Of a stretch of DNA of 64,000 nucleotides, positions 17,630 to 26,675 are shown piece by piece. Source of the DNA: Macrostomum hystrix (lineage: Eukaryota > Animalia > Platyhelminthes). The stretch covers positions 11,904,001-11,968,000 of the forward strand of contig CATNEN010000007.1 of assembly GCA_950097015.1 (NCBI GenBank), written 5' to 3'. Position 1 is the first letter of the stretch. Each line of letters starts with the position of its first letter. A model generated the notes under the pieces. The model saw nothing but the letters and a program-made list of their open reading frames with translations, did no database searches and had not been told where the DNA came from. The translations under genes and the position numbers were made by a program.

Positions 17630-18073
17630 CCAGTAACCAAATGGAAGTGTTCAAAAGGTAGCGGCGAGTAGAGCGGATGCGAGTAGGTCAAGAACAAAGA
17701 ATAGTGAATTTATTAGCACAAGAGCTTGTATTTAACATGCACTGCGAGCTGCAGTTCCCGAAGAACAGATGTTCACAAATAAATCAATGTATTTTACAAA
17801 AAAACTGCAACGCAAAATATTTAACAATAAAAGACAGGAGAAGACTGACAATGAGTGACTAACAAGCGAGTGGAGAACAGCAGATACAAACAATCAATAA
17901 TAGTTCACACATGACTAGAAACCACAAGGGTACATAAGATGCATTAATAGGCCGACCGATGCAGGGTGGCTAGTGTTGGCAATACGCGAACTGGCAATAG
18001 GAATGGAAACTGGGGGCAAAACGGCCGCACATTATCCTCAACTGGAGCAGCTGGAGCCAGAACCGCAGTCTAA

Positions 18074-21000
18074 TCAGGAGGCCGCAAACGAGGAGCCGGC
18101 CGAGGCGGATCGCACCGCCCAGTTGGGCGCACCAGGCGGCGCAGTCCGGTTGCTCTCCGCGCCGCCGTGGCGCTGGCAGCGGGCCAGCTGGGTGCGCTGC
18201 TTGACTGTGGCGAATCTGGCGTAGAAAACTTGATCCAGCCGGCGCTTCATCTCAGTGACCGTGTCAGACTCCCAGGCCAGGCAGCGGACCCTCAGGCTGG
18301 CCAGCTCGTCATCCGGCTCCCCGGGGTACGACGAGGCTTCGTCCTCCTCGTCCGAGGAGGTGAAATCCCGGCACAACACGGTGCGGAACTGGTCCAGCTC
18401 GTCTGGCGACATGTTCGGCAGCAGCGACTCGAAGGCCTTCTGACGCCGGCTTAGCTTCTGAGGGATGAAGGGAACAGTGTACCTGAAGGACACGTGGACG
18501 GTGGAACTGAAGGACACTGGAACAGTGGACCTGAAGGATACGTGGACTGTGTACCTGAAGGACACTGGGACAGTTTACCTGAAGGACACGTGGACGATAG
18601 AACTGATGGACACGTGGGCTGTGGAACTGAAGGACACGTGGACGGTGTACCTGATGGACACGTGGACTGTGGACCTGAAGGACACTGGAACAGTGGACCT
18701 GAAGGATAAGTGGACTGTGTACCTGAAGGACACTGGGACAGTTTACCTGAAGGACACGTGGACGATGGAACTGATGGACACGTGGGCTGTGGAACTGAAG
18801 GACACGTGGACGGTGTACCTGATGGACACGTGGACTGTGGACCTGAAGGACACGTGGACGGTGGAACTGAAGGACACGTGGACGGTGGAACTGAAGAACA
18901 CTGGAACAGTGGACCTGAAGGATACGTGGACTGTGTACCTGAAGGACACTGGGACAGTTTACCTGAAGGACACGTGGACGGTGGAACTGATGGACACGTG
19001 GACAGTGTACCTGAAGGACACGGGGACAGTGTACCTGATGGACACGTGGACGGTGGAACTGAAGGACACGTGGACTGTGTACCTGAAGGACACTGGGACA
19101 GTTTACCTGAAGGACACGTGGACGGTGGAACTGAAGGACACGTGGACTGTGTACCTGAAGGACACTGGGACAGTTTACCTGAAGGACACGTGGACGGTGG
19201 AACTGAAGGACACGTGGACAGTGTACCTGAAGGACACGGGGACTGTGACCTGATGGACAAGTGGACTGTGGAGAGAGGTTCTTCGAACCAGGAAGACCAG
19301 ACGTGAGAGCATCGTTGACGTCTTACCGCTTTCATTCTGTTGCATCGGGCGGCAGTGCGCCTGTTGCACTGCACCCGGCGGCCCTCCCTCACGTAGTACT
19401 GGTACAACCCTGCGGGCAGTAGGGGCGGCAATATCAATAAGAAGCGCTGATAAAAAGCAGCAGACAAGAGTCAGAGCGGCCCTCACTCTTCCACGTGTCC
19501 GGATCGGCTTCGACGCTGGAGGCTCCGGGTATGTGCTCTATGAGCCTGCTGGCCGCGCTCTGATTGGTCGGATGCTCCCAGCTGAGGGTGGTGCGGGTCA
19601 CAATAATTTTCTATCAAGCTTAACCAAAATTCAAACTGGAATTGCCATCGCAAACACTCACGGCAGTGAGAAGTCAAACAAATGAGGACCGCTGCCGCGC
19701 AGCTTCTTGTAAGTCTCGTGCAGCAGAGCCTGCGAAATGATGCGAGAAGCGGTTCACGGTGAATGGCACCGCCTTGGAGGAATGCTTGTTTGCAGGCCAG
19801 GCTAATGAGTGATCTGCAGGCCAGGCTAATGAGTGATCTGCATGCCAGGCTAATTAGTGATCTGCACGACAGGCTAATGAGTGATCTGCATGCCAGGCTA
19901 ATGAGTGATCTGCAGGCCAGGCTAATGAGTGATCTGCATGCCAGGCTAATGAGTGATCTGCAGGCCAGGCTAATGAGTGATCTGCATGCCAGGCTAATGA
20001 GTGATCTGCAGGCCAGGCTAATGAGTGATCTGCATGCCAGGCTAATGAGTGATCTGCATGCCAGGCTAATGAGTGATCTGCATGCCAGGCTAATGAGTGA
20101 TCTGCATGCCAGGCTAATGAGTGATCTGCATGCCAGGCTAATGAGTGATCTGCATGCCAGGCTAATGAGTGATCTGCATGCCAGGCTAATTAGTGATCTG
20201 CACGACAGGCTAATGAGTGATCTGCATGCCAGGCTAATGAGTGATCTGCAGGCCAGGCTAATGAGTGATCTGCATGCCAGGCTAATGAGTGATCTGCAGG
20301 CCAGGCTAATGAGTGATCTGCATGCCAGGCTAATGAGTGATCTGCATGCCAGGCTAATGAGTGATCTGCATGCCAGGCTAATGAGTGATCTGCAGGCCAG
20401 GCTAATGAGTGATCTGCATGCCAGGCTAATTAGTGATCTGCACGACAGGCTAATTAGTGATCTGCAGGCCAGGCTAATGAGTGATCTGCATGCCAGGCTA
20501 ATTAGTGATCTGCATGCCAGGCTAATGAGTGATCTGCATGCCAGGCTAATTAGTGATCTGCATGCCAGGCTAATGAGTTGTCTGCGTGGGAATTCATAGA
20601 TCTGCAGGCGATTCTCACCCGGACGTCCAGGCCGCCACCAGAGCCGGTCACAGGGGCGACCTCGCTGCCAATAAGAATCGAAGAGCTGTCGACACCGACG
20701 GACCTGTCGCCGTTGAGCTGCTCGTCCTCCTCCTGATCCGCGTCCTCCTCGAAGCGGGAAGAGCCGCTGTCGATAATTTGAATCTTCGTGTCGACGCAGT
20801 CCTCAGCAGCTCCAGCTGCCTCCTCCTGCTGGCACAGGTGTCGCTTTCTGTCGCCGAGCTGCGGAGCTGGAGCCTGGCGGGGCCCTACGCTCGCCGCCGC
20901 TGGCTGGTCGGACAGCCGCTGCTCTGCACGGAGCAGTCGCCGCTGCACATCAGCGGCTGACGGCTGCATGATGTCCACCAGCTGAAGGTGCAGGCTGTTG

Positions 21001-21132
21001 ATGAGGCGCAGTGCCGTGCACAGGTCGTCCAGCGGCATGCTGTCCAGCAGCATCCCGGCGTTCAGCAGGGTGGACTCGAACAGCGTCAGGGCGGAGAAGG
21101 TGGGCTGCTGCTGAGTCACTGCGGTGGCCATG
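18074..21132 (-). CDS. Uncharacterised C14orf93/DUF4616-like protein, paralogue A (5 exons)
   Basis: Phase-consistent exons 21132-20619, 19729-19662, 19581-19487, 19409-19327, 18457-18074. Homologous to the neighbouring gene at both ends (FSALTLFESTL vs FSPLTMFECTI; FDFSLP; RDFTSSDEE...VRCLAWES...MKRRLD). Family assignment rests on recalled similarity to C14orf93 motifs. Confidence 0.8.
18465..19272. repeat. 24-bp minisatellite CTGAAGGACACGTGGACGGTGGAA (variants), intron of paralogue A
   Basis: Tandem periodicity. Confidence 0.95.
19791..20578. repeat. 24-bp minisatellite GCCAGGCTAATGAGTGATCTGCAT, intron of paralogue A
   Basis: Tandem periodicity. Confidence 0.95.
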
Positions 21133-21986
21133 GGGTGGATGAGACTGGACCGCTGCAAAATGGTAGCATCCGCCAGTTAGCTACGAGCACTGCATCGATG
21201 GGTCAGCCGATCTCAATGTCTACGAGTATAAAGCTAAAGCTACGAGCGTTGCTGGCATGCACCCCACCCGATGCCCTTGAACTTCTACTTTAAGTAGCAA
21301 GTCTGGGATTCACACATTTGAGATTTGTTGCAAAACAACAAGCAAAGTAAAACAGGCAGGAGCTCAAAGCAGTGATTTGTTTGGCTGGGCTTGAGTCACA
21401 GGCCGAGCACAGTTGCGAAACTCGACCGCTTGATGCGTCATGAACAGTGTGTATTTAAACATTTAACATTTGAACATTTAGGCAGTGTTACGGCTTACAC
21501 AAGCAGAGACTGTTAGGGCCAGGGCCGGACAGACTGCCAATCAGTACACAGTAGAAAATGCTGGCAGGATTACATTCATGAGCTCATTGGTGAGACTGTG
21601 AGCTCGGGCAGTTTAGCTGAATTAGTTGCACGCACATAAAAACACAGAGAAGGAGCGAGTGCCTCACGAATCAGTTAATAAAACATAATAAAATAAAACT
21701 GAAATACGAGTCCGATCGCATTCAAAGGCTAAAAACCTCAGCTGAACCTTGCTTCAATTATGACCGACTACTCCGATTATACACCCAATTTGCCTTATTG
21801 CTATTATGCAGAATAGGCGATAGATAGAGAGATGCGGGGAGACATGGGTCAGCCCCTTATGCGGAGTGAGCCCCGGCCAAGCTGTCGCTTAGCACCTACA
21901 AGCTGATTCGGGTATCCTGATTCAAATTAGAAATGGCCATAACTGACGCAAGGATGCAATGATCTCAGACCAATGAGTCCGCCGTG

Positions 21987-24900
21987 TCATTCCATGCCGC
22001 CAGTCGGGGCAGGCTGAGCGAGTGCAATCCAGGCGGGGTCGCGCGCCCAGTCCAGCTGGTCAGCGGGCGGAGGCCGGCTGGACAGCACGGCGGGGTCTCG
22101 CTGCAGGCGGGTCACATCCGCCCGCTGCTTGTCGTCGGCCAATCGTTCGATGAAAACATCGTCAAGGCGCCGCTTCATCGCCTTGAGCTCCAGGCTCTCC
22201 CAAGGCAGGCTGCGCACCTTCATCTCTGAGTCCAGATCGGCTCCGCCCTCCTCATCCGAGCTGGTGTAGTCCCTGTTGAGCACGCTCTCAAACTTGGCCT
22301 GCGTGGCGGCGTCCAGACTGGCCTTGATGGCCTCGTAGCTCTTCTGGCGCCGGTTCAGCTTCTGCGGGGCGTGGCAGACGGAGGCTAAAAACAACATGTC
22401 CGATGTTAACTGATAGGAGAGAACTTACCGACTGGGCTATTGCCACAGGCTTCCTGATTGGACGGAACCTATTCACATGCTTCCTGATTGGACGGAACCT
22501 ATACACATGCTTCCTGATTGCACGGAACCTATTCACATGCTTCCTGACTCGACGGAGCCTATTCACATTTTTACTGATGGAACAGAATAAACAGGCCTCC
22601 TGATGGGAGAGAGCATACTCATGGGCTGTTCGAATAGGCCTTAATAAAATATTTTAGCCCCATTCTGGTGCTCCTATCATTAGATAAACCTAAAAAAACG
22701 CGCACAAAAACTCTTACCCGTTTCGCTTCATAATTGTAACTCCTCTTTCTCCCACCTGGATTATCCCAATGCTATTCGCAAAAGCTTTCAATTCTGTCCC
22801 TAAAGTGGAATCCAAGGCATTAACGCCAAATGAGCAGCTAACAAGCATGCCCCAGCAGAAACAAACAATGCGGTGAATGAGACAGACTCCGGTTTCATAG
22901 ATTAGCAGCTACGGTCAAATTGATCGCACTGGCAGTCACGGTGGATCAAATTGTCAAGAACAGACTCACGGATTGCACAAGAAAGATTGAGTTGAGCTTG
23001 CTCTGCTGCTGCTGCTGTTTAAAGTCTCGCTTTAGATTCTTATTAAACCAGCTGCCAAGGTACTTGAAGCTGGACTCTATAAATAAATGGCATTCGCTAA
23101 ATGCATCTCAGCCGGAGGCAGCTGACAAAAACTGAGGCGCCCAGAATGGGAGTTGCTGGGCCATGCGAGAGCTCTGCATTTCAATTAATCTATTATAATA
23201 TGAAAGAATCCTAAATCAAAGCAGCTACAATTGCAAAGCACACGGGCTACGCAAACTGACCAGGCTCATCCGGACAATGCTTCGAGTGTCCAGCTGGCGC
23301 TTGTTGACTTTAAAGGCGCTCTGCAGGTTCTTGCGGTAATGCCCGCCAAAGTACCTTAGCGACTGGTCTGCAGGGAGTGCGGGGCTATTATTGTGCTACA
23401 AGCTAATTTACTGAATGCTAGGATGTCCGCCACACAGGAGAAGCATTGCAGAGGCCAGATCTAACACGAGACACTTACTATGAGAGTCTGCACAGTCTGC
23501 CGACACTGCAGGCTGCGCTCTGAGCTGACGTATTTAAACTTAAGATATCTGCGATAGTAGGAGCTGAGGTAGGCCGAGCTGCCTCCTGCAAGCAGACGGC
23601 TGTTCGGCAATGCAAAACTTGCTTCTAAATACAGTTCACACAACAAACCGCTTTGCTAGGCACGTTGCAGAGGAGAGAGAGAGAACGGCTGGGGCACTGA
23701 CTGGGGCGGGGATTCTGTGTGGCGCACGTACCCAGATTCGCTGGAAGCTATGTTTCTGATAGTCGTGCCTAAAGTCGCGCCGCAGTACGCAGCGAAAATA
23801 GCCCGAGTAGTAATTCTGGGCCTGCTCTGCAACGCATTGATTTTAGTCAGTTTTGCCTGACGATTCTGTCATATCAGCGTCATATTTTGGCTAGGGCAGC
23901 TGTGGGGCCCAATGACGGAGGCGGTCTAGCGCAAGTCAGACAAACAGGAGGGACCTACCAGGACGCGGCGGTACACTTTGTTGCAGGATCGCTGTTGGTT
24001 CAGCACTTTATAGTCGCGCTTGAGCACAGCGTTAAAGTACATTTTAAAGTATTTTTCGGCTATGGCTGCAAGTGCAAATGGAGGGCATTGTGAAGGCAGA
24101 GGAGCGAAACGGGGAGATGCGGGGGCGGCTCGGGCATTCCAGGGCTGAACTGAGCTGGGGCACCGACAACTACTCAAATAGTTCAAATCCGCAGCCTTAC
24201 TGAGCACAGATTCTTGAAGCGGTCCATTCGCTGGTGCAACTGAGCCTGCTCAATCAACTTCTTAGCCGAGGGTTTCAGCGTCCAAGAGAAATAGTTGCTC
24301 ACGTAGCCCGTGCACACCTCTGCAGGCAGATGGCGGACGCGACTGTCTTATTCGGCCAACTAGTTGTTTAACAGGGGCTAAAGGGCGTTGCTAGGGGAGA
24401 CGAAGCTGGGCGCACCGGAGGCGGAGTGCTTACCAAGTTAAGGAAAATCTGCTTCTTAAAGCGGGACGCCATGACAACCTTTTTCACGCCGGGCTTCAGA
24501 GTGCAGCCAAAGTACACCGGCATGTACCTGTTGCAGCCGCCTGAAAACATTCGGTGCGCGTTGCATTGCAGATGCGGATGGGGATTTCAGCGGGGGGCGC
24601 CGGGCAGAGCAGCGCTCCCAGTTGCTTCGCGGAGGGAGGCGGGGCAGTGAGGAGTCAGTATCCTAGCAACCGCTTCTGCAGGATGGCCGATCAGATTATG
24701 CTAATTAGCTGATTAGTGTCATAGCAGACTGAGCAGCGAGCGCTCGCGCCCTCGTTAGGCGGCCCCAGAATAAACGGGGCCGATGTAATGCAATTTTAGT
24801 TAAAATTTCAGTTTCATTATTCTCAGCTCTGACTGACTTGGTCTGTGACTGTTCAGCCCTGCGCGCTCTCCCAGCGCGAGTCCGCTTCGGCCGGACAAGC

Positions 24901-26005
24901 CAATTTTTGGATAGATTTGATTGCGCAATACTCATCAGGCCCTGCAACGCCCTTTTTAAATAAATTGAAAACGAAAACATGGATTTAGACAAATGCACAT
25001 CGAGGCACTGGGCGGTCGGTTGTCAAGAGGCATGTATGCAGATTTGACACTAGAGTGTACTAGAGTGAAGCGTGCTCATGTACTGCTTAGAGACTCACTC
25101 CTCCATGCTGCTAGGTTGGCGGGCTGTTGCGAGCTCAGGCTGAGGGCTCGGTCAATCACCCGATTGGCGGCCAGGACGTTGACGCGAGCGGAGTAGGGCA
25201 GGGAGAAGTCGAACACGTTGGTACCAGTTTCATCTTTCAGCACGCGGTAGGCCTTGCGCAAGGAGGCTTTCCATTCGTTTGAGAGCTCGCCGGAGTCCGT
25301 CAGGTCGGCGCCGCCGCTGCCGCCGACGCCTAGCCGCGGTACCTTGGCCGGCGGGCTCTGGCCGAAGGCGGTCGTGGAGGTGTTGGAGGCGTCGAACACG
25401 AGGTCCGCTTCCATCAGCACGCAGTCATCGTCCGAGTCAGCGCATGGCTCCGATTTGACAGTCGAAAATGAATTCGGTTCCGGCTTGCCAAGCTTTGAAG
25501 TACCCGGAGCACCAGCGGCTGCCGCGGCGGCGGCTGCAGCGGCAACTGCGGCCAGGCCGCCGGAGCTGTTCCCCACAGAGCGCGAGGCGGGCGGCGGGCA
25601 CTGTGGAGCGGACCAGACAAGAATCATTGTGAGCAGAAACCCCTTATGTACATCGCAATTAATTTGATCCCAAATCTACAATTTCTTCACACTGAGATAT
25701 GGTGACGTATCTGCATCTGTCAAGGGCGGACATTCTGGCACAGCAGTTCAGCATTCCTGCTCACTTACCTGACTGTGCTCGTCGGCGACGTTGGCCAGCC
25801 GCTGCACCGTGGGGTCCAGCACCTCCAGAAGGTGGCCGTGCAGCTGGGCGACAATCTTGAAGGCCATGAGCAGGTCGCGCACGGCCATGCTGTCAATGAG
25901 CATGGTGGCGCTACTAATGGTGCACTCGAACATGGTCAGCGGCGAGAAGGTGCTGCCGCCCTGGCTGCCAGCCGGAGTTGACGGGAATCCCATAGCGATA
26001 GACAT
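21987..26005 (-). CDS. Uncharacterised C14orf93/DUF4616-like protein, paralogue B, with an array of 7 alternative internal exons
   Basis: Constant exons 26005-25769, 25600-25099 (ends phase 1, ...NLAAWR) and 22361-21987 (starts phase 0, KLNRRQKSYE...RDYTSSDEE...VRSLPWES...MKRRLD). Seven homologous phase 1->0 cassettes lie between the last two. Confidence 0.85.
22449..22568. repeat. 30-bp tandem repeat x4 GCTTCCTGATTGGACGGAACCTATTCACAT
   Basis: Tandem periodicity. Confidence 0.9.
22970..23076 (-). CDS. Variable exon V7 (107 nt): KSSFKYLGSWFNKNLKRDFKQQQQQSKLNSIFLVQS
   Basis: TTTATAG acceptor, GTGAGT donor, phase 1->0. Confidence 0.85.
23261..23367 (-). CDS. Variable exon V6 (107 nt): NQSLRYFGGHYRKNLQSAFKVNKRQLDTRSIVRMSL
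   Basis: CCTGCAG acceptor, GTCAGT donor, phase 1->0. Confidence 0.82.
23479..23585 (-). CDS. Variable exon V5 (107 nt): RGSSAYLSSYYRRYLKFKYVSSERSLQCRQTVQTLI
   Basis: CTTGCAG acceptor, GTAAGT donor, phase 1->0. Confidence 0.85.
23732..23826 (-). CDS. Variable exon V4 (95 nt): KQAQNYYSGYFRCVLRRDFRHDYQKHSFQRIW
   Basis: GTTGCAG acceptor, GTACGT donor, phase 1->0. Confidence 0.82.
23959..24065 (-). CDS. Variable exon V3 (107 nt): TIAEKYFKMYFNAVLKRDYKVLNQQRSCNKVYRRVL
   Basis: CTTGCAG acceptor, GTAGGT donor, phase 1->0. Confidence 0.85.
24201..24319 (-). CDS. Variable exon V2 (119 nt): KVCTGYVSNYFSWTLKPSAKKLIEQAQLHQRMDRFKNLCS
   Basis: CCTGCAG acceptor, GTAAGG donor, phase 1->0. Confidence 0.85.
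24434..24540 (-). CDS. Variable exon V1 (107 nt): SGCNRYMPVYFGCTLKPGVKKVVMASRFKKQIFLNL
   Basis: TTTTCAG acceptor, GTAAGC donor, phase 1->0, open frame. Confidence 0.85.
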
Positions 26006-26675
26006 GACGCTGGGCTAGTCCTAGATGACTGGAGGTTGAAAGAACAATCACTGCAAGCAACGCGATGGTCGGGCATGGGGTGGCTGTGAGTTATGAAATA
26101 TGCAGCTGCCCGAACTATAAATAATTGGCTACATCAAATATGCCTAGCATACTAGTTAGCGTAACGGGTTGGGGTAAGCTACCTGATCTATAGAAGACTG
26201 CGAATCAACTCTTAGATACATAAAAAGAAATGGAGAGCTAAAGTTAAAGCAACATGGATTCGTGCTGTTGCTACGAGCGTAGTTAGTAGTATTTTAACAG
26301 AGACCATTTATTCAACGCCTTAGTACTACTAGGAATACATCAATCTGGTAGTTTTTACTTCCAACAATGTCCCAGAGTGCTCCTTTTGTGCCTTTTTAAA
26401 GATTTTTTAACAGTTTCACGCGCTTTACAAAATGAACTTAGCGCTTCGCTTATTAAGTAGCTCTTTTATTTATATTTATTCATATCGTGTCACAAAAACA
26501 AACAAGGAGCTGCTTAGTTAAAATTTGCAAATGCTAGTTTAACCAGCTATGTGCTTATCGGTTACATTGGAAATTCCATTTCGATTGATGGGTTATTTTG
26601 CTCGGCTAGTTGCCATCAGAAACGTCTAACTCTTATCAAATATTTGTAAATGCATTAATATTTCAGAAATTCTGG

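What the first reader, a model, noticed from the sequence alone, without database searches (positions are those of the whole stretch)
22970..24540. Dscam-style array of seven tandem, putatively mutually exclusive exons in an uncharacterised C14orf93/DUF4616-like gene
Seen in sequence: between constant exons 25600-25099 (ends phase 1) and 22361-21987 (starts phase 0) lie seven cassettes: 24540-24434, 24319-24201, 24065-23959, 23826-23732, 23585-23479, 23367-23261 and 23076-22970. Each has a YAG acceptor, a GT donor, an open frame and phase 1->0, and five are exactly 107 nt. Their first 16 residues align without gaps as xx[CAS]xxYxxx[YHW][FY]xxxL[KRQ]: SGCNRYMPVYFGCTLK, KVCTGYVSNYFSWTLK, TIAEKYFKMYFNAVLK, KQAQNYYSGYFRCVLR, RGSSAYLSSYYRRYLK, NQSLRYFGGHYRKNLQ, KSSFKYLGSWFNKNLK. 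Each is 3n+2 long, so including zero or two shifts the frame. Inference: exactly one is chosen per mRNA, giving at least seven isoforms with a shared scaffold and one variable segment. Known analogues are the Drosophila Dscam1, Mhc and 14-3-3zeta exon clusters. I know of no such array in this family, and the ORF track shows only fragments of it.
Basis: partly seen in the sequence, partly recalled or inferred. Interest (0 to 1): 0.93.

Follow-up and report, generated by a model that had tools for sequence, protein, structure and literature searches.

The report
Flatworm gene with seven swappable exons
A Macrostomum flatworm gene of unknown function carries seven look-alike short exons, of which RNA data show single copies spliced between the fixed exons, and a conserved intron sequence that can pair in front of each copy, the exon-picking design best known from insect Dscam1.

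Summary
On the minus strand, seven cassettes of 95-119 nt lie between constant exons 25600-25099 and 22361-21987. All have AG/GT borders, 3n+2 length, one open frame and coding-type GC3.

RNA contigs from two studies show c1->V2, c1->V7, V3->c2 and V6->c2, plus a frame-shifting c1->c2 skip. No cassette-to-cassette joint was listed. The M. lignano ortholog protein holds exactly one cassette (V7 type). Another M. lignano model shows V1-V3 conserved.

The genome matches the published Macrostomum hystrix assembly. The gene belongs to a family of about 24 paralogs. At least six carry 107-nt-type arrays and others carry 77-nt arrays.

A 17-nt element lies 145 nt after c1. Its 11-nt core is the only non-repetitive 11-mer of the c1-c2 span shared with paralogs, at the same place in four of them. 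It is complementary to sites 53-72 nt upstream of the cassettes (sum z -6.5 against shuffles). That fits a Dscam exon-6-type docking/selector design, which is inferred, not shown.

The C14orf93/DUF4616 label is not supported. Earlier agents in this scan reported the same design on paralogs elsewhere in this genome. I found no published report for flatworms.

The parts
25769..26050 (-). Exon 1. The spliced-leader trans-splice acceptor AG is at 26052-26051 and the ATG at 26005-26003. The donor lies after 25769.
   Evidence: An X4 contig ends at 26051 with 24 loose letters. Their reverse complement is the 3' part of the published Macrostomum SL. The joint 25769->25600 is seen in X4.
25099..25600 (-). 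Constant exon c1, 502 nt, ends in phase 1
   Evidence: In a local alignment to M. lignano P0166, 142 residues match over 171 aligned columns.
24938..24954 (-). Candidate docking site, 17 nt (AAGGGCGTTGCAGGGCC), 145 nt after the c1 donor. Its conserved 11-nt core is at 24949-24939.
   Evidence: It is the only non-low-complexity 11-mer of the c1-c2 span shared with two or more paralog loci. It sits at the same relative place in L026, L028, L029 and L030, with unconserved flanks. It was also the top-ranked pairing window of the intron.
24434..24540 (-). Cassette V1 (107 nt)
   Evidence: AG/GT borders, open frame, GC3 0.80. An ortholog segment is present in M. lignano P0170, 24/27 identical. No RNA joint was seen.
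24201..24319 (-). Cassette V2 (119 nt)
   Evidence: Joint c1 25099->24319 in X4. It matches the 119-nt cassette type of paralog L027, with pN 0.33 against pS 0.89. It is partly present in P0170.
23959..24065 (-). Cassette V3 (107 nt)
   Evidence: Joint 23959->22361 in X4. The ortholog segment in P0170 is 26/34 identical.
23732..23826 (-). Cassette V4 (95 nt)
   Evidence: AG/GT borders, open frame, GC3 0.71. No RNA joint was seen.
23479..23585 (-). Cassette V5 (107 nt)
   Evidence: AG/GT borders, open frame, GC3 0.69. No RNA joint was seen.
23261..23367 (-). Cassette V6 (107 nt)
   Evidence: Joint 23261->22361 in X3 (49 letters on the short side) and in X4. It is 63% identical to cassette 1 of paralog L026, with dN/dS about 0.10.
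22970..23076 (-). Cassette V7 (107 nt)
   Evidence: Joint c1 25099->23076 in X4. It is the cassette present in the M. lignano ortholog protein P0166, 32/32 identical in the local alignment.
24594..24611 (-). Selector-like site upstream of V1. It is weak. An alternative site at 24570-24556 pairs with the docking site in the intron's MFE fold.
   Evidence: E -24.4; p 0.28.
24379..24402 (-). Selector-like site, 59 nt upstream of V2
   Evidence: E -29.6; p 0.003.
24131..24154 (-). Selector-like site, 65 nt upstream of V3
   Evidence: E -29.9; p 0.010.
23892..23914 (-). Selector-like site, 65 nt upstream of V4
   Evidence: E -28.6; p 0.013.
23657..23702 (-). Selector-like site upstream of V5, with its core at 23670-23657
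   Evidence: E -26.1; p 0.033.
23440..23461 (-). Selector-like site, 72 nt upstream of V6
   Evidence: E -28.0; p 0.003.
23147..23166 (-). Selector-like site, 70 nt upstream of V7
   Evidence: E -26.7; p 0.027.
22433..22568 (-). 30-nt x 4.2 tandem repeat in the last intron. Its last unit holds a weaker selector-like site 71 nt upstream of c2. Role unknown.
   Evidence: (E -25.0, z -2.0).
21987..22361 (-). Constant exon c2. It starts in phase 0, encodes the conserved C-terminal domain, and ends with TGA at 21989-21987.

Best explanation
This is a real cluster of seven mutually exclusive alternative exons in an SL-trans-spliced gene of Macrostomum hystrix.

**Productive mRNAs.** Each productive mRNA joins c1 to one cassette and that cassette to c2. 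The seven resulting proteins differ only in a 32-40 residue stretch. That stretch forms the first two thirds of a long, confidently modelled alpha-helix that leads into the conserved C-terminal domain. Conserved aromatic and leucine positions keep the scaffold, while the basic remainder varies.

**Frame rule (shown).** With zero cassettes, or with two, the reading frame hits a premature stop. Only single-cassette mRNAs therefore encode the C-terminal domain.

**Choice of cassette (inferred).** A conserved docking site 145 nt downstream of c1 pairs with one of the selector sites about 55-70 nt upstream of each cassette. The pairing brings that acceptor next to c1 and loops out the cassettes before it, as in the Dscam1 exon 6 cluster.

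**Origin.** The array arose by tandem exon duplication that copied the selector along with the exon. It predates the duplication of several paralogs.
For: **Anatomy.**

**RNA.** Exact GT..AG joints were seen for c1->V2, c1->V7, V3->c2 and V6->c2 (V6->c2 in two studies), for intron 1, and for the c1->c2 skip. No V-to-V joint was listed. The spliced-leader tag shows that X4 is mRNA.

**Other species.**
- M. lignano P0166, the syntenic ortholog, consists of exon 1, c1, a single V7-type cassette and c2.
- P0167 and P0031 share their constant parts but carry different cassettes.
- P0170 carries V1-V3 orthologs.
- P0168 is a skip form with the same frame-shifted tail type.

**Selection.** pN is far below a saturated pS for V2, V6 and V7 against paralog cassettes. 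GC3 periodicity is present in all seven.

**Docking and selectors.**
- The core is conserved in four paralogs at the same place, and it is the only such 11-mer.
- Summed duplex energy is -193 against -149 +/- 7 kcal/mol for dinucleotide-shuffled introns (z -6.5, 0 of 300 shuffles). Six of seven introns reach p <= 0.033.
- The sites lie 53-72 nt from the acceptors.
- The complementary core is enriched upstream of 27 cassettes in six genes (p about 1e-8).
- The introns are otherwise unalignable.

**Structure.** The cassette lies at residues 249-284, inside helix 244-299, with pLDDT 85-97. The same holds in P0001.
Against: - No single read or contig spans c1, a cassette and c2, so exclusivity per molecule rests on the absence of V-V joints in contigs, on the frame logic and on database proteins.
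- Four of the joints have only 26-28 letters on the short side.
- V1, V4 and V5 lack junction evidence. V4 and V5 also lack cross-species evidence.
- The docking/selector pairing is computational only.
  - V1's selector is not significant.
  - Other G-rich windows of the same intron also pair well with these C-rich introns.
  - Cognate docking sites beat non-cognate ones in only two of five genes, clearly so only in L028.
  - Paralog L027 has three cassettes but no copy of the core.
  - The core ends in TTGCAG|G and so resembles a 3' splice site.
- The protein's function is unknown.
Confidence: 0.75

Rival explanations
1. The cassettes are true mutually exclusive exons, but the choice does not depend on RNA pairing. 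The conserved 17-nt element would then be a protein-binding intronic splicing element or a decoy 3' splice site. Exclusivity would come only from the frame rule, with decay or truncation of other products, and from cassette-specific splicing factors.
For: - The core ends in TTGCAG|G, like the acceptors of V3, V4 and V5.
- Thermodynamic pairing is not unique to this window.
- The cognate versus non-cognate docking test is inconclusive.
- L027 has an array without the core.
- A skip mRNA exists.
Against: - Complementarity to six of seven upstream introns exceeds dinucleotide shuffles (sum z -6.5). The rival windows reach only -2.7 and -1.1.
- The pairing sites sit at a stereotyped distance from the acceptors.
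- The complement of the core is enriched upstream of cassettes in six genes.
- Conservation extends 3 nt past the AG, and the bases before it are purine-rich, which is unlike a 3' splice site.
- No joint uses this AG.
Confidence: 0.2
2. Only some cassettes (V2, V3, V6, V7) are functional exons. V1, V4 and V5 would be decaying duplicates that are rarely or never spliced in.
For: No junction was seen for V1, V4 or V5 in the four runs laid. V4 and V5 have no close counterpart in paralogs and none in the M. lignano proteins found.
Against: - All three keep AG/GT borders, 3n+2 length, an open frame, the scaffold motif and GC3 of 0.69-0.80.
- The V1 ortholog is conserved and open in M. lignano.
- Their upstream introns keep selector-like sites (V4 p 0.013, V5 p 0.033).
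- Logan contigs drop rare variants, and 31 records were not shown.
Confidence: 0.15
3. The cassettes are included in series in frame-preserving sets (1, 4 or 7 cassettes), so this is not a one-of-seven choice.
For: Arithmetic only: 1, 4 or 7 units of 3n+2 restore the c2 frame.
Against: After a first cassette, the next is read in phase 0. V1, V2, V3, V6 and V7 have stops in that frame. V4 and V5 run straight into a stop at the start of c2. No V-V joint was listed. The database proteins hold one cassette each.
Confidence: 0.02

Closest known systems
Drosophila/pancrustacean Dscam1 exon 6 cluster (docking site and selector sequences; Graveley 2005, as cited in PMC6071210; see also PMC8042237, PMC7430681, PMC8791459)
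   Same: - A tandem array of homologous alternative exons lies between two constant exons.
- One conserved docking element sits in the intron just after the upstream constant exon.
- A degenerate complementary site lies upstream of each variable exon.
- One exon is used per mRNA.
   Different: - The protein is unrelated: no Ig or FN3 domains and no Pfam family.
- There are seven exons, not 48.
- The organism is a flatworm, not an arthropod.
- The same docking core is shared by several paralogous genes.
- Cassette length is 3n+2, so frame adds a second safeguard. Dscam exon 6 variants do not shift the frame (my own knowledge).
- The pairing is untested here.
Smaller insect MXE clusters with competing RNA structures (14-3-3zeta, Mhc, MRP, srp; PMC4691838, PMC6071210)
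   Same: These are clusters of 3-8 exons in which intronic docking/selector pairings have been reported.
   Different: They are all arthropod genes and mostly single-copy. The position of the docking site (upstream or downstream) varies.
Evolutionary model of Ivanov and Pervouchine 2018 (PMC6071210)
   Same: Tandem duplication copies an exon together with the adjacent intronic selector, which automatically creates competing structures. Here the selector sites sit at a constant distance (53-72 nt) from each acceptor, as that model predicts.
   Different: The model was derived from fly and human annotations, not from flatworms.
Paralogous arrays in the same genome
   Same: They belong to the same gene family, sit at the same position before the C-terminal exon, and were read in the same docking/selector way. 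I re-found 8-9 cassettes in L028, 6-7 in L029 and 3 each in L026, L027 and L030. I also saw 77-nt arrays in L040, L041 and L042.
   Different: This locus is a separate gene on contig C7 with its own seven cassettes. The 77-nt subfamily lacks this docking core.
Mammalian two-exon MXE with competing structures (ATE1; PMC7797038)
   Same: Competing intronic pairings control the choice between exons.
   Different: There are only two exons, and the architecture is different.

Membership tests
Mutually exclusive exon cluster made by tandem exon duplication | Adjacent exons that are homologous, of similar length and of the same phase, lying between constant exons | tested here: met
   There are seven cassettes of 95-119 nt, all phase 1->0, with a shared motif.
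Mutually exclusive exon cluster made by tandem exon duplication | Individual cassettes are spliced directly to both constant exons | tested here: met
   Joints c1->V2, c1->V7, V3->c2 and V6->c2 were seen. No joint was seen for V1, V4 or V5.
Mutually exclusive exon cluster made by tandem exon duplication | Never two cassettes in one mature mRNA | tested here: inconclusive
   No V-V joint was listed. Any double inclusion gives a stop. M. lignano proteins hold one cassette each. However, no record spans c1, a cassette and c2.
Dscam1 exon-6-type docking/selector control (mechanism, not homology) | A conserved docking site in the intron downstream of the upstream constant exon | tested here: met
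   The 11-nt core is conserved in four paralogs at the same place with unconserved flanks. It is the only such 11-mer. Conservation in other species could not be tested.
Dscam1 exon-6-type docking/selector control (mechanism, not homology) | A selector complementary to the docking site upstream of every variable exon | tested here: met
   Six of seven introns reach p <= 0.033 against dinucleotide shuffles, with a sum z of -6.5. V1 is weak. The motif is enriched in six genes.
Dscam1 exon-6-type docking/selector control (mechanism, not homology) | Pairing is needed for exon inclusion (disruptive and compensatory mutations) | not testable with these tools
   This needs minigenes or genome editing.
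Dscam protein family | Ig and FN3 domain architecture | tested here: not met
   No Pfam domain was found in the exons or in full-length relatives. The models are helical.
C14orf93 / Pfam PF15394 (DUF4616) | A match to the DUF4616 profile | tested here: not met
   There was no hit at E <= 1 on the exons, none at E <= 0.01 in 150 family members, and none at E <= 10 in the six-frame genome search. The only hint is an Atlas cluster in which 12% of members carry DUF4616 (score 0.94, 149 shared features).

The most novel reading that the evidence does not exclude
A flatworm-specific expansion of an unnamed metazoan gene family has evolved Dscam-like docking/selector-controlled exon arrays independently of arthropods. 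These arrays are spread over ten or more paralogs: about 30 cassettes of the 107-nt type and a similar number of the 77-nt type. Together they would give a large repertoire of proteins that differ in one exposed basic helix. Such a repertoire could act as a recognition or diversification system, possibly with stochastic choice per cell.
Probability: 0.3. Interest if true: 0.85.

Novelty: new member of a known kind. Interest (0 to 1): 0.66.

Why it matters
In the papers I could search, clusters of more than three mutually exclusive exons with docking/selector signals are described only for arthropod genes. I found no flatworm case.

This locus is compact, about 2.7 kb from c1 to c2. It has RNA support and a docking core shared by paralogs. 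That makes it a small, tractable system for testing whether competing RNA structures are a general, convergently evolved solution for choosing one exon of many. Macrostomum species already serve as laboratory models with genome resources (PMC10468722).

The work also corrects the gene's family label. It shows that gene models in this family are mis-predicted: P0170 chains cassettes, and P0169 reads into an intron.

Tried and rejected
**Family and fold searches that led nowhere**
- Pfam on single exons, on ten and then ten more full-length relatives, and on all 150 best family members found no family and no DUF4616.
- A PF15394 search of the whole genome gave 0 hits.
- Rfam on 17800-26300 found nothing at E <= 1.
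- Foldseek of the P0001 model against the PDB found nothing at E <= 0.001.
- VIA-align wide gave only Z <= 5.6. The hits were winged-helix-like over residues 181-275 and integrase core-binding-like over 287-379. These lie in the tool's stated noise range, so I treat them as leads only.

**Tests that were inconclusive**
- In the cross-gene docking versus selector energy matrix, the cognate docking site was the best in only two of five genes (L028 clearly, L029 marginally), so it is inconclusive for co-evolution.
- The whole-intron fold is not more stable than shuffles (z -0.14).

**Mechanisms considered and rejected**
- Steric hindrance between adjacent cassettes: the introns are 111-184 nt, which is too long.
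- Recursive splicing at the docking site: no GT follows its AG.
- A local hairpin between each selector and its own acceptor: this fits only V5.

Cross-species conservation of the docking site and of V4-V6 could not be tested.
- Read laying and the look-up of sequencing runs allow one call each, and both were used.

**Other points**
Exons were searched by reference, and the database proteins P0166 and P0001 served as proxies.
Full report
**Source and gene.** The window's genome has 220,453,370 bases in 42 contigs. These are exactly the figures published for the Macrostomum hystrix assembly (PMC10468722, Table 1). The nearest database proteins are hypothetical proteins of M. lignano.

The gene lies on the minus strand:
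- exon 1, 26050-25769, with the ATG at 26005
- c1, 25600-25099
- the cassette array
- c2, 22361-21987

An RNA contig of run X4 ends at 26051 with 24 unmatched letters. Their reverse complement is the 3' part of the published 35-nt Macrostomum spliced leader. The mRNA is therefore SL-trans-spliced at the AG at 26052-26051, and X4 is an RNA data set.

c1 is 502 nt and ends in phase 1. The seven cassettes are 107, 119, 107, 95, 107, 107 and 107 nt, all 3n+2. Each follows CAG or TAG and precedes GT. c2 starts in phase 0. Read in the frame set by c1, all seven are open and show the stated motif without gaps.

Each cassette on its own has GC3 of 0.66-0.80 against GC1/GC2 of 0.23-0.52. This is the same coding periodicity as c1 (0.75) and c2 (0.82).

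A finder for AG..GT, 3n+2, an open frame and the motif returns exactly these seven places in the gene. It returns none on the opposite strand of 24 paralog loci or of the window's own paralog stretch. A profile HMM of the cassettes finds seven hits here and no opposite-strand hit at E<1.

**RNA evidence.** Logan contigs of four runs from two studies were laid on 20650-26150. The exact GT..AG joints were:
- c1 (25099) to V2 (24319)
- c1 to V7 (23076)
- V3 (23959) to c2 (22361)
- V6 (23261) to c2, seen in X3 and in X4
- intron 1
- a direct c1->c2 joint, seen in X1

No cassette-to-cassette joint was listed.

There are three caveats. Four joints have only 26-28 letters on the short side, because of the k-mer limit of the contigs. 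No record spans c1, a cassette and c2. V1, V4 and V5 have no joint. All the joints nevertheless fall exactly on the predicted borders.

**The frame rule.** After one cassette the phase is 0. In that phase V1, V2, V3, V6 and V7 contain stops. V4 and V5 are open but lead straight into a stop at the start of c2. The skip form reads 24 frame-shifted codons and then stops. Only single-cassette mRNAs encode the C-terminal domain.

**Evidence from another species.**
- M. lignano P0166 lies next to the ortholog (P0013) of the window's downstream paralog, so I take it as the syntenic ortholog. It consists of exon 1, c1, exactly one cassette of V7 type and c2.
- P0170, a different model of the same gene, wrongly chains the orthologs of V1, part of V2, and V3. 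This shows that these cassettes exist, are open and are roughly three-quarters or more identical in M. lignano.
- P0167 and P0031 have the same constant parts but different cassettes, which match cassettes 1 and 3 of paralog L027.
- P0168 is a skip form with the same kind of frame-shifted tail.
- P0001 holds one cassette of the L029 array.

**The family.** The exon 1 and c2 peptides each hit about 24 places in this genome, often in tandem. One is the neighbouring gene at about 21158-18110 in the window.

Arrays of the 107-nt type are present in six genes:

| Locus | Cassettes |
|---|---|
| this gene | 7 |
| L028 | 8-9 |
| L029 | 6-7 |
| L026 | 3 |
| L027 | 3 |
| L030 | 3 |

Four further genes have a single cassette. 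Other paralogs carry arrays of 77-nt cassettes at the same position: L042 about 13, L040 7, L041 4-5.

Between paralogs, synonymous sites are saturated while V2, V6 and V7 keep recognisable counterparts. For V6 against L026, dN/dS is about 0.10. For V2 and V7, pN is about 0.33 against pS of 0.9-1.0. Cassette types therefore predate the gene duplications and have been under purifying selection.

A profile of the C-terminal exon finds 685 proteins at E <= 0.001. They include echinoderm and hemichordate proteins. No Pfam family was detected anywhere, including DUF4616. I therefore do not accept the C14orf93/DUF4616 label.

**How one cassette may be chosen.** This part is inferred. I had already seen this scan's notes on paralogs, which mention docking and selector sites, when I ran the test here (onwards).

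- *Pairing rank.* The best-pairing 28-nt window of the c1-V1 intron against the inter-cassette introns lies at about 24952.
- *Conservation.* An unbiased 11-mer comparison was run between the whole c1-c2 span and five paralog loci. Apart from a CAG repeat, only this site is shared. Its 11-nt core occurs once, on the gene strand, in the intron after c1 in L026, L028, L029 and L030. The flanks are unrelated.
- *Selector sites.* Each cassette has a degenerate complement of the site 53-72 nt upstream of its acceptor.
- *Shuffle test.* Against dinucleotide-preserving shuffles of the introns, six of seven reach p <= 0.033. The summed energy is -193 against -149 +/- 7 kcal/mol (z -6.5, 0 of 300 shuffles). 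Two other G-rich windows of the same intron give z of -2.7 and -1.1.
- *Motif enrichment.* The complement of the core (CTGCAAC and its wobble forms) is enriched in the -110..-36 window of 27 cassettes in six genes (p about 1e-8 to 1e-9).
- *Background.* The upstream introns are otherwise unalignable.

This is the topology of the Dscam1 exon 6 cluster. It also fits the duplication model of PMC6071210.

Weak points remain. V1's selector is not significant, although the intron's MFE fold pairs the docking site with a second site 15 nt before V1. The cognate versus non-cognate test is inconclusive. L027 lacks the core. The core resembles a 3' splice site, although its conservation pattern does not fit one. 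A weaker selector-like site lies at the end of a 30-nt tandem repeat, 71 nt before c2. It might relate to the skip form, but this is unexplained.

**Protein level.** AlphaFold models of P0166 and P0001, used as database proxies, place the cassette inside one long helix. In P0166 that is residues 249-284 of helix 244-299, with pLDDT 85-97. The helix runs into the C-terminal alpha/beta domain.

The invariant Tyr and Leu and the aromatic pair are spaced as one face of a helix, and the rest is basic and variable. My inference is that the scaffold face is kept and an exposed basic surface is swapped. Structure searches gave only noise-level similarities, so the function stays unknown.

**Novelty.** Full-text searches found docking/selector arrays only in arthropod genes, and two-exon competing structures in mammals. 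I found nothing on such arrays in Macrostomum or other flatworms. Within this scan the same design was already reported for paralogs on other contigs. This locus is a further, RNA-supported member with the clearest shared docking core.

**Verdict.**
- The exon cluster is real: about 0.9.
- One cassette per productive mRNA: about 0.85.
- All seven cassettes are used: about 0.7.
- The choice is made by docking/selector pairing: about 0.55.

Noticed in passing
window 18110-21158 (-): A tandem paralog of the same family lies directly downstream, with its N-terminal exon at about 21134-20940 and its C-terminal exon at 18457-18116. It is the ortholog of M. lignano P0013. It appears to have one constitutive cassette-equivalent exon and no array. 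Its introns are filled with long coding-looking minisatellites at 18465-19467 and 19763-20599.
   Followed up: partly
L042 (G000:C12:352750-362749), L040 (C2:6199700-6206400), L041 (C34:7402750-7411900): Other paralogs carry arrays of 77-nt cassettes (about 13, 7 and 4-5) at the same position before the C-terminal exon. M. lignano P0003 contains exactly one of them. The docking core of the 107-nt subfamily is absent there.
   Followed up: partly
window 22444-22568 (-): A 30-nt x 4.2 tandem repeat sits in the last intron. Its units resemble the 3' half of the selector consensus (ATCAGG...), and its last unit gives a weak docking complement 71 nt before c2. It may be linked to the cassette-skipping mRNA, but this is unexplained.
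   Followed up: partly
window 21522-21759: RNA contigs of X1, X2 and X4 cover this stretch, which lies between this gene's stop codon and the downstream paralog's ATG. Depth is low at 21754-21937. It could be a 3' UTR part, the next gene's 5' exon or a separate transcript.
   Followed up: no
window 25309-25543 (-): In the alanine/GCN repeat part of c1, X4 shows several loose ends and an odd joint (25543 to 25309, with 9 letters between). This is probably repeat-length variation or cross-matching with paralog transcripts.
   Followed up: no
window introns I0, I1, I2, I3, I6, I7 of the array: A second recurring C-rich motif (CCGCCTCC and variants) appears near several cassette borders and just before c2. 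It may be a protein-binding element or a second pairing partner.
   Followed up: no
M. lignano proteins P0170, P0169, P0168: Public gene models of this family are often wrong at the array. P0170 chains three cassettes. P0169 runs into an intron after its cassette. P0168 is the frame-shifted skip form. Several UniRef names attached to family members (Exo70, Ras-GEF, BEN, ARID and others) appear spurious, since Pfam finds no domain in the family members scanned.
   Followed up: partly
window 23827-23835 (-): The V4 acceptor (GCGTTGCAG) is the same 9-mer as the docking core, so it could compete for selectors. It may simply reflect the local TTGCAG acceptor consensus.
   Followed up: no
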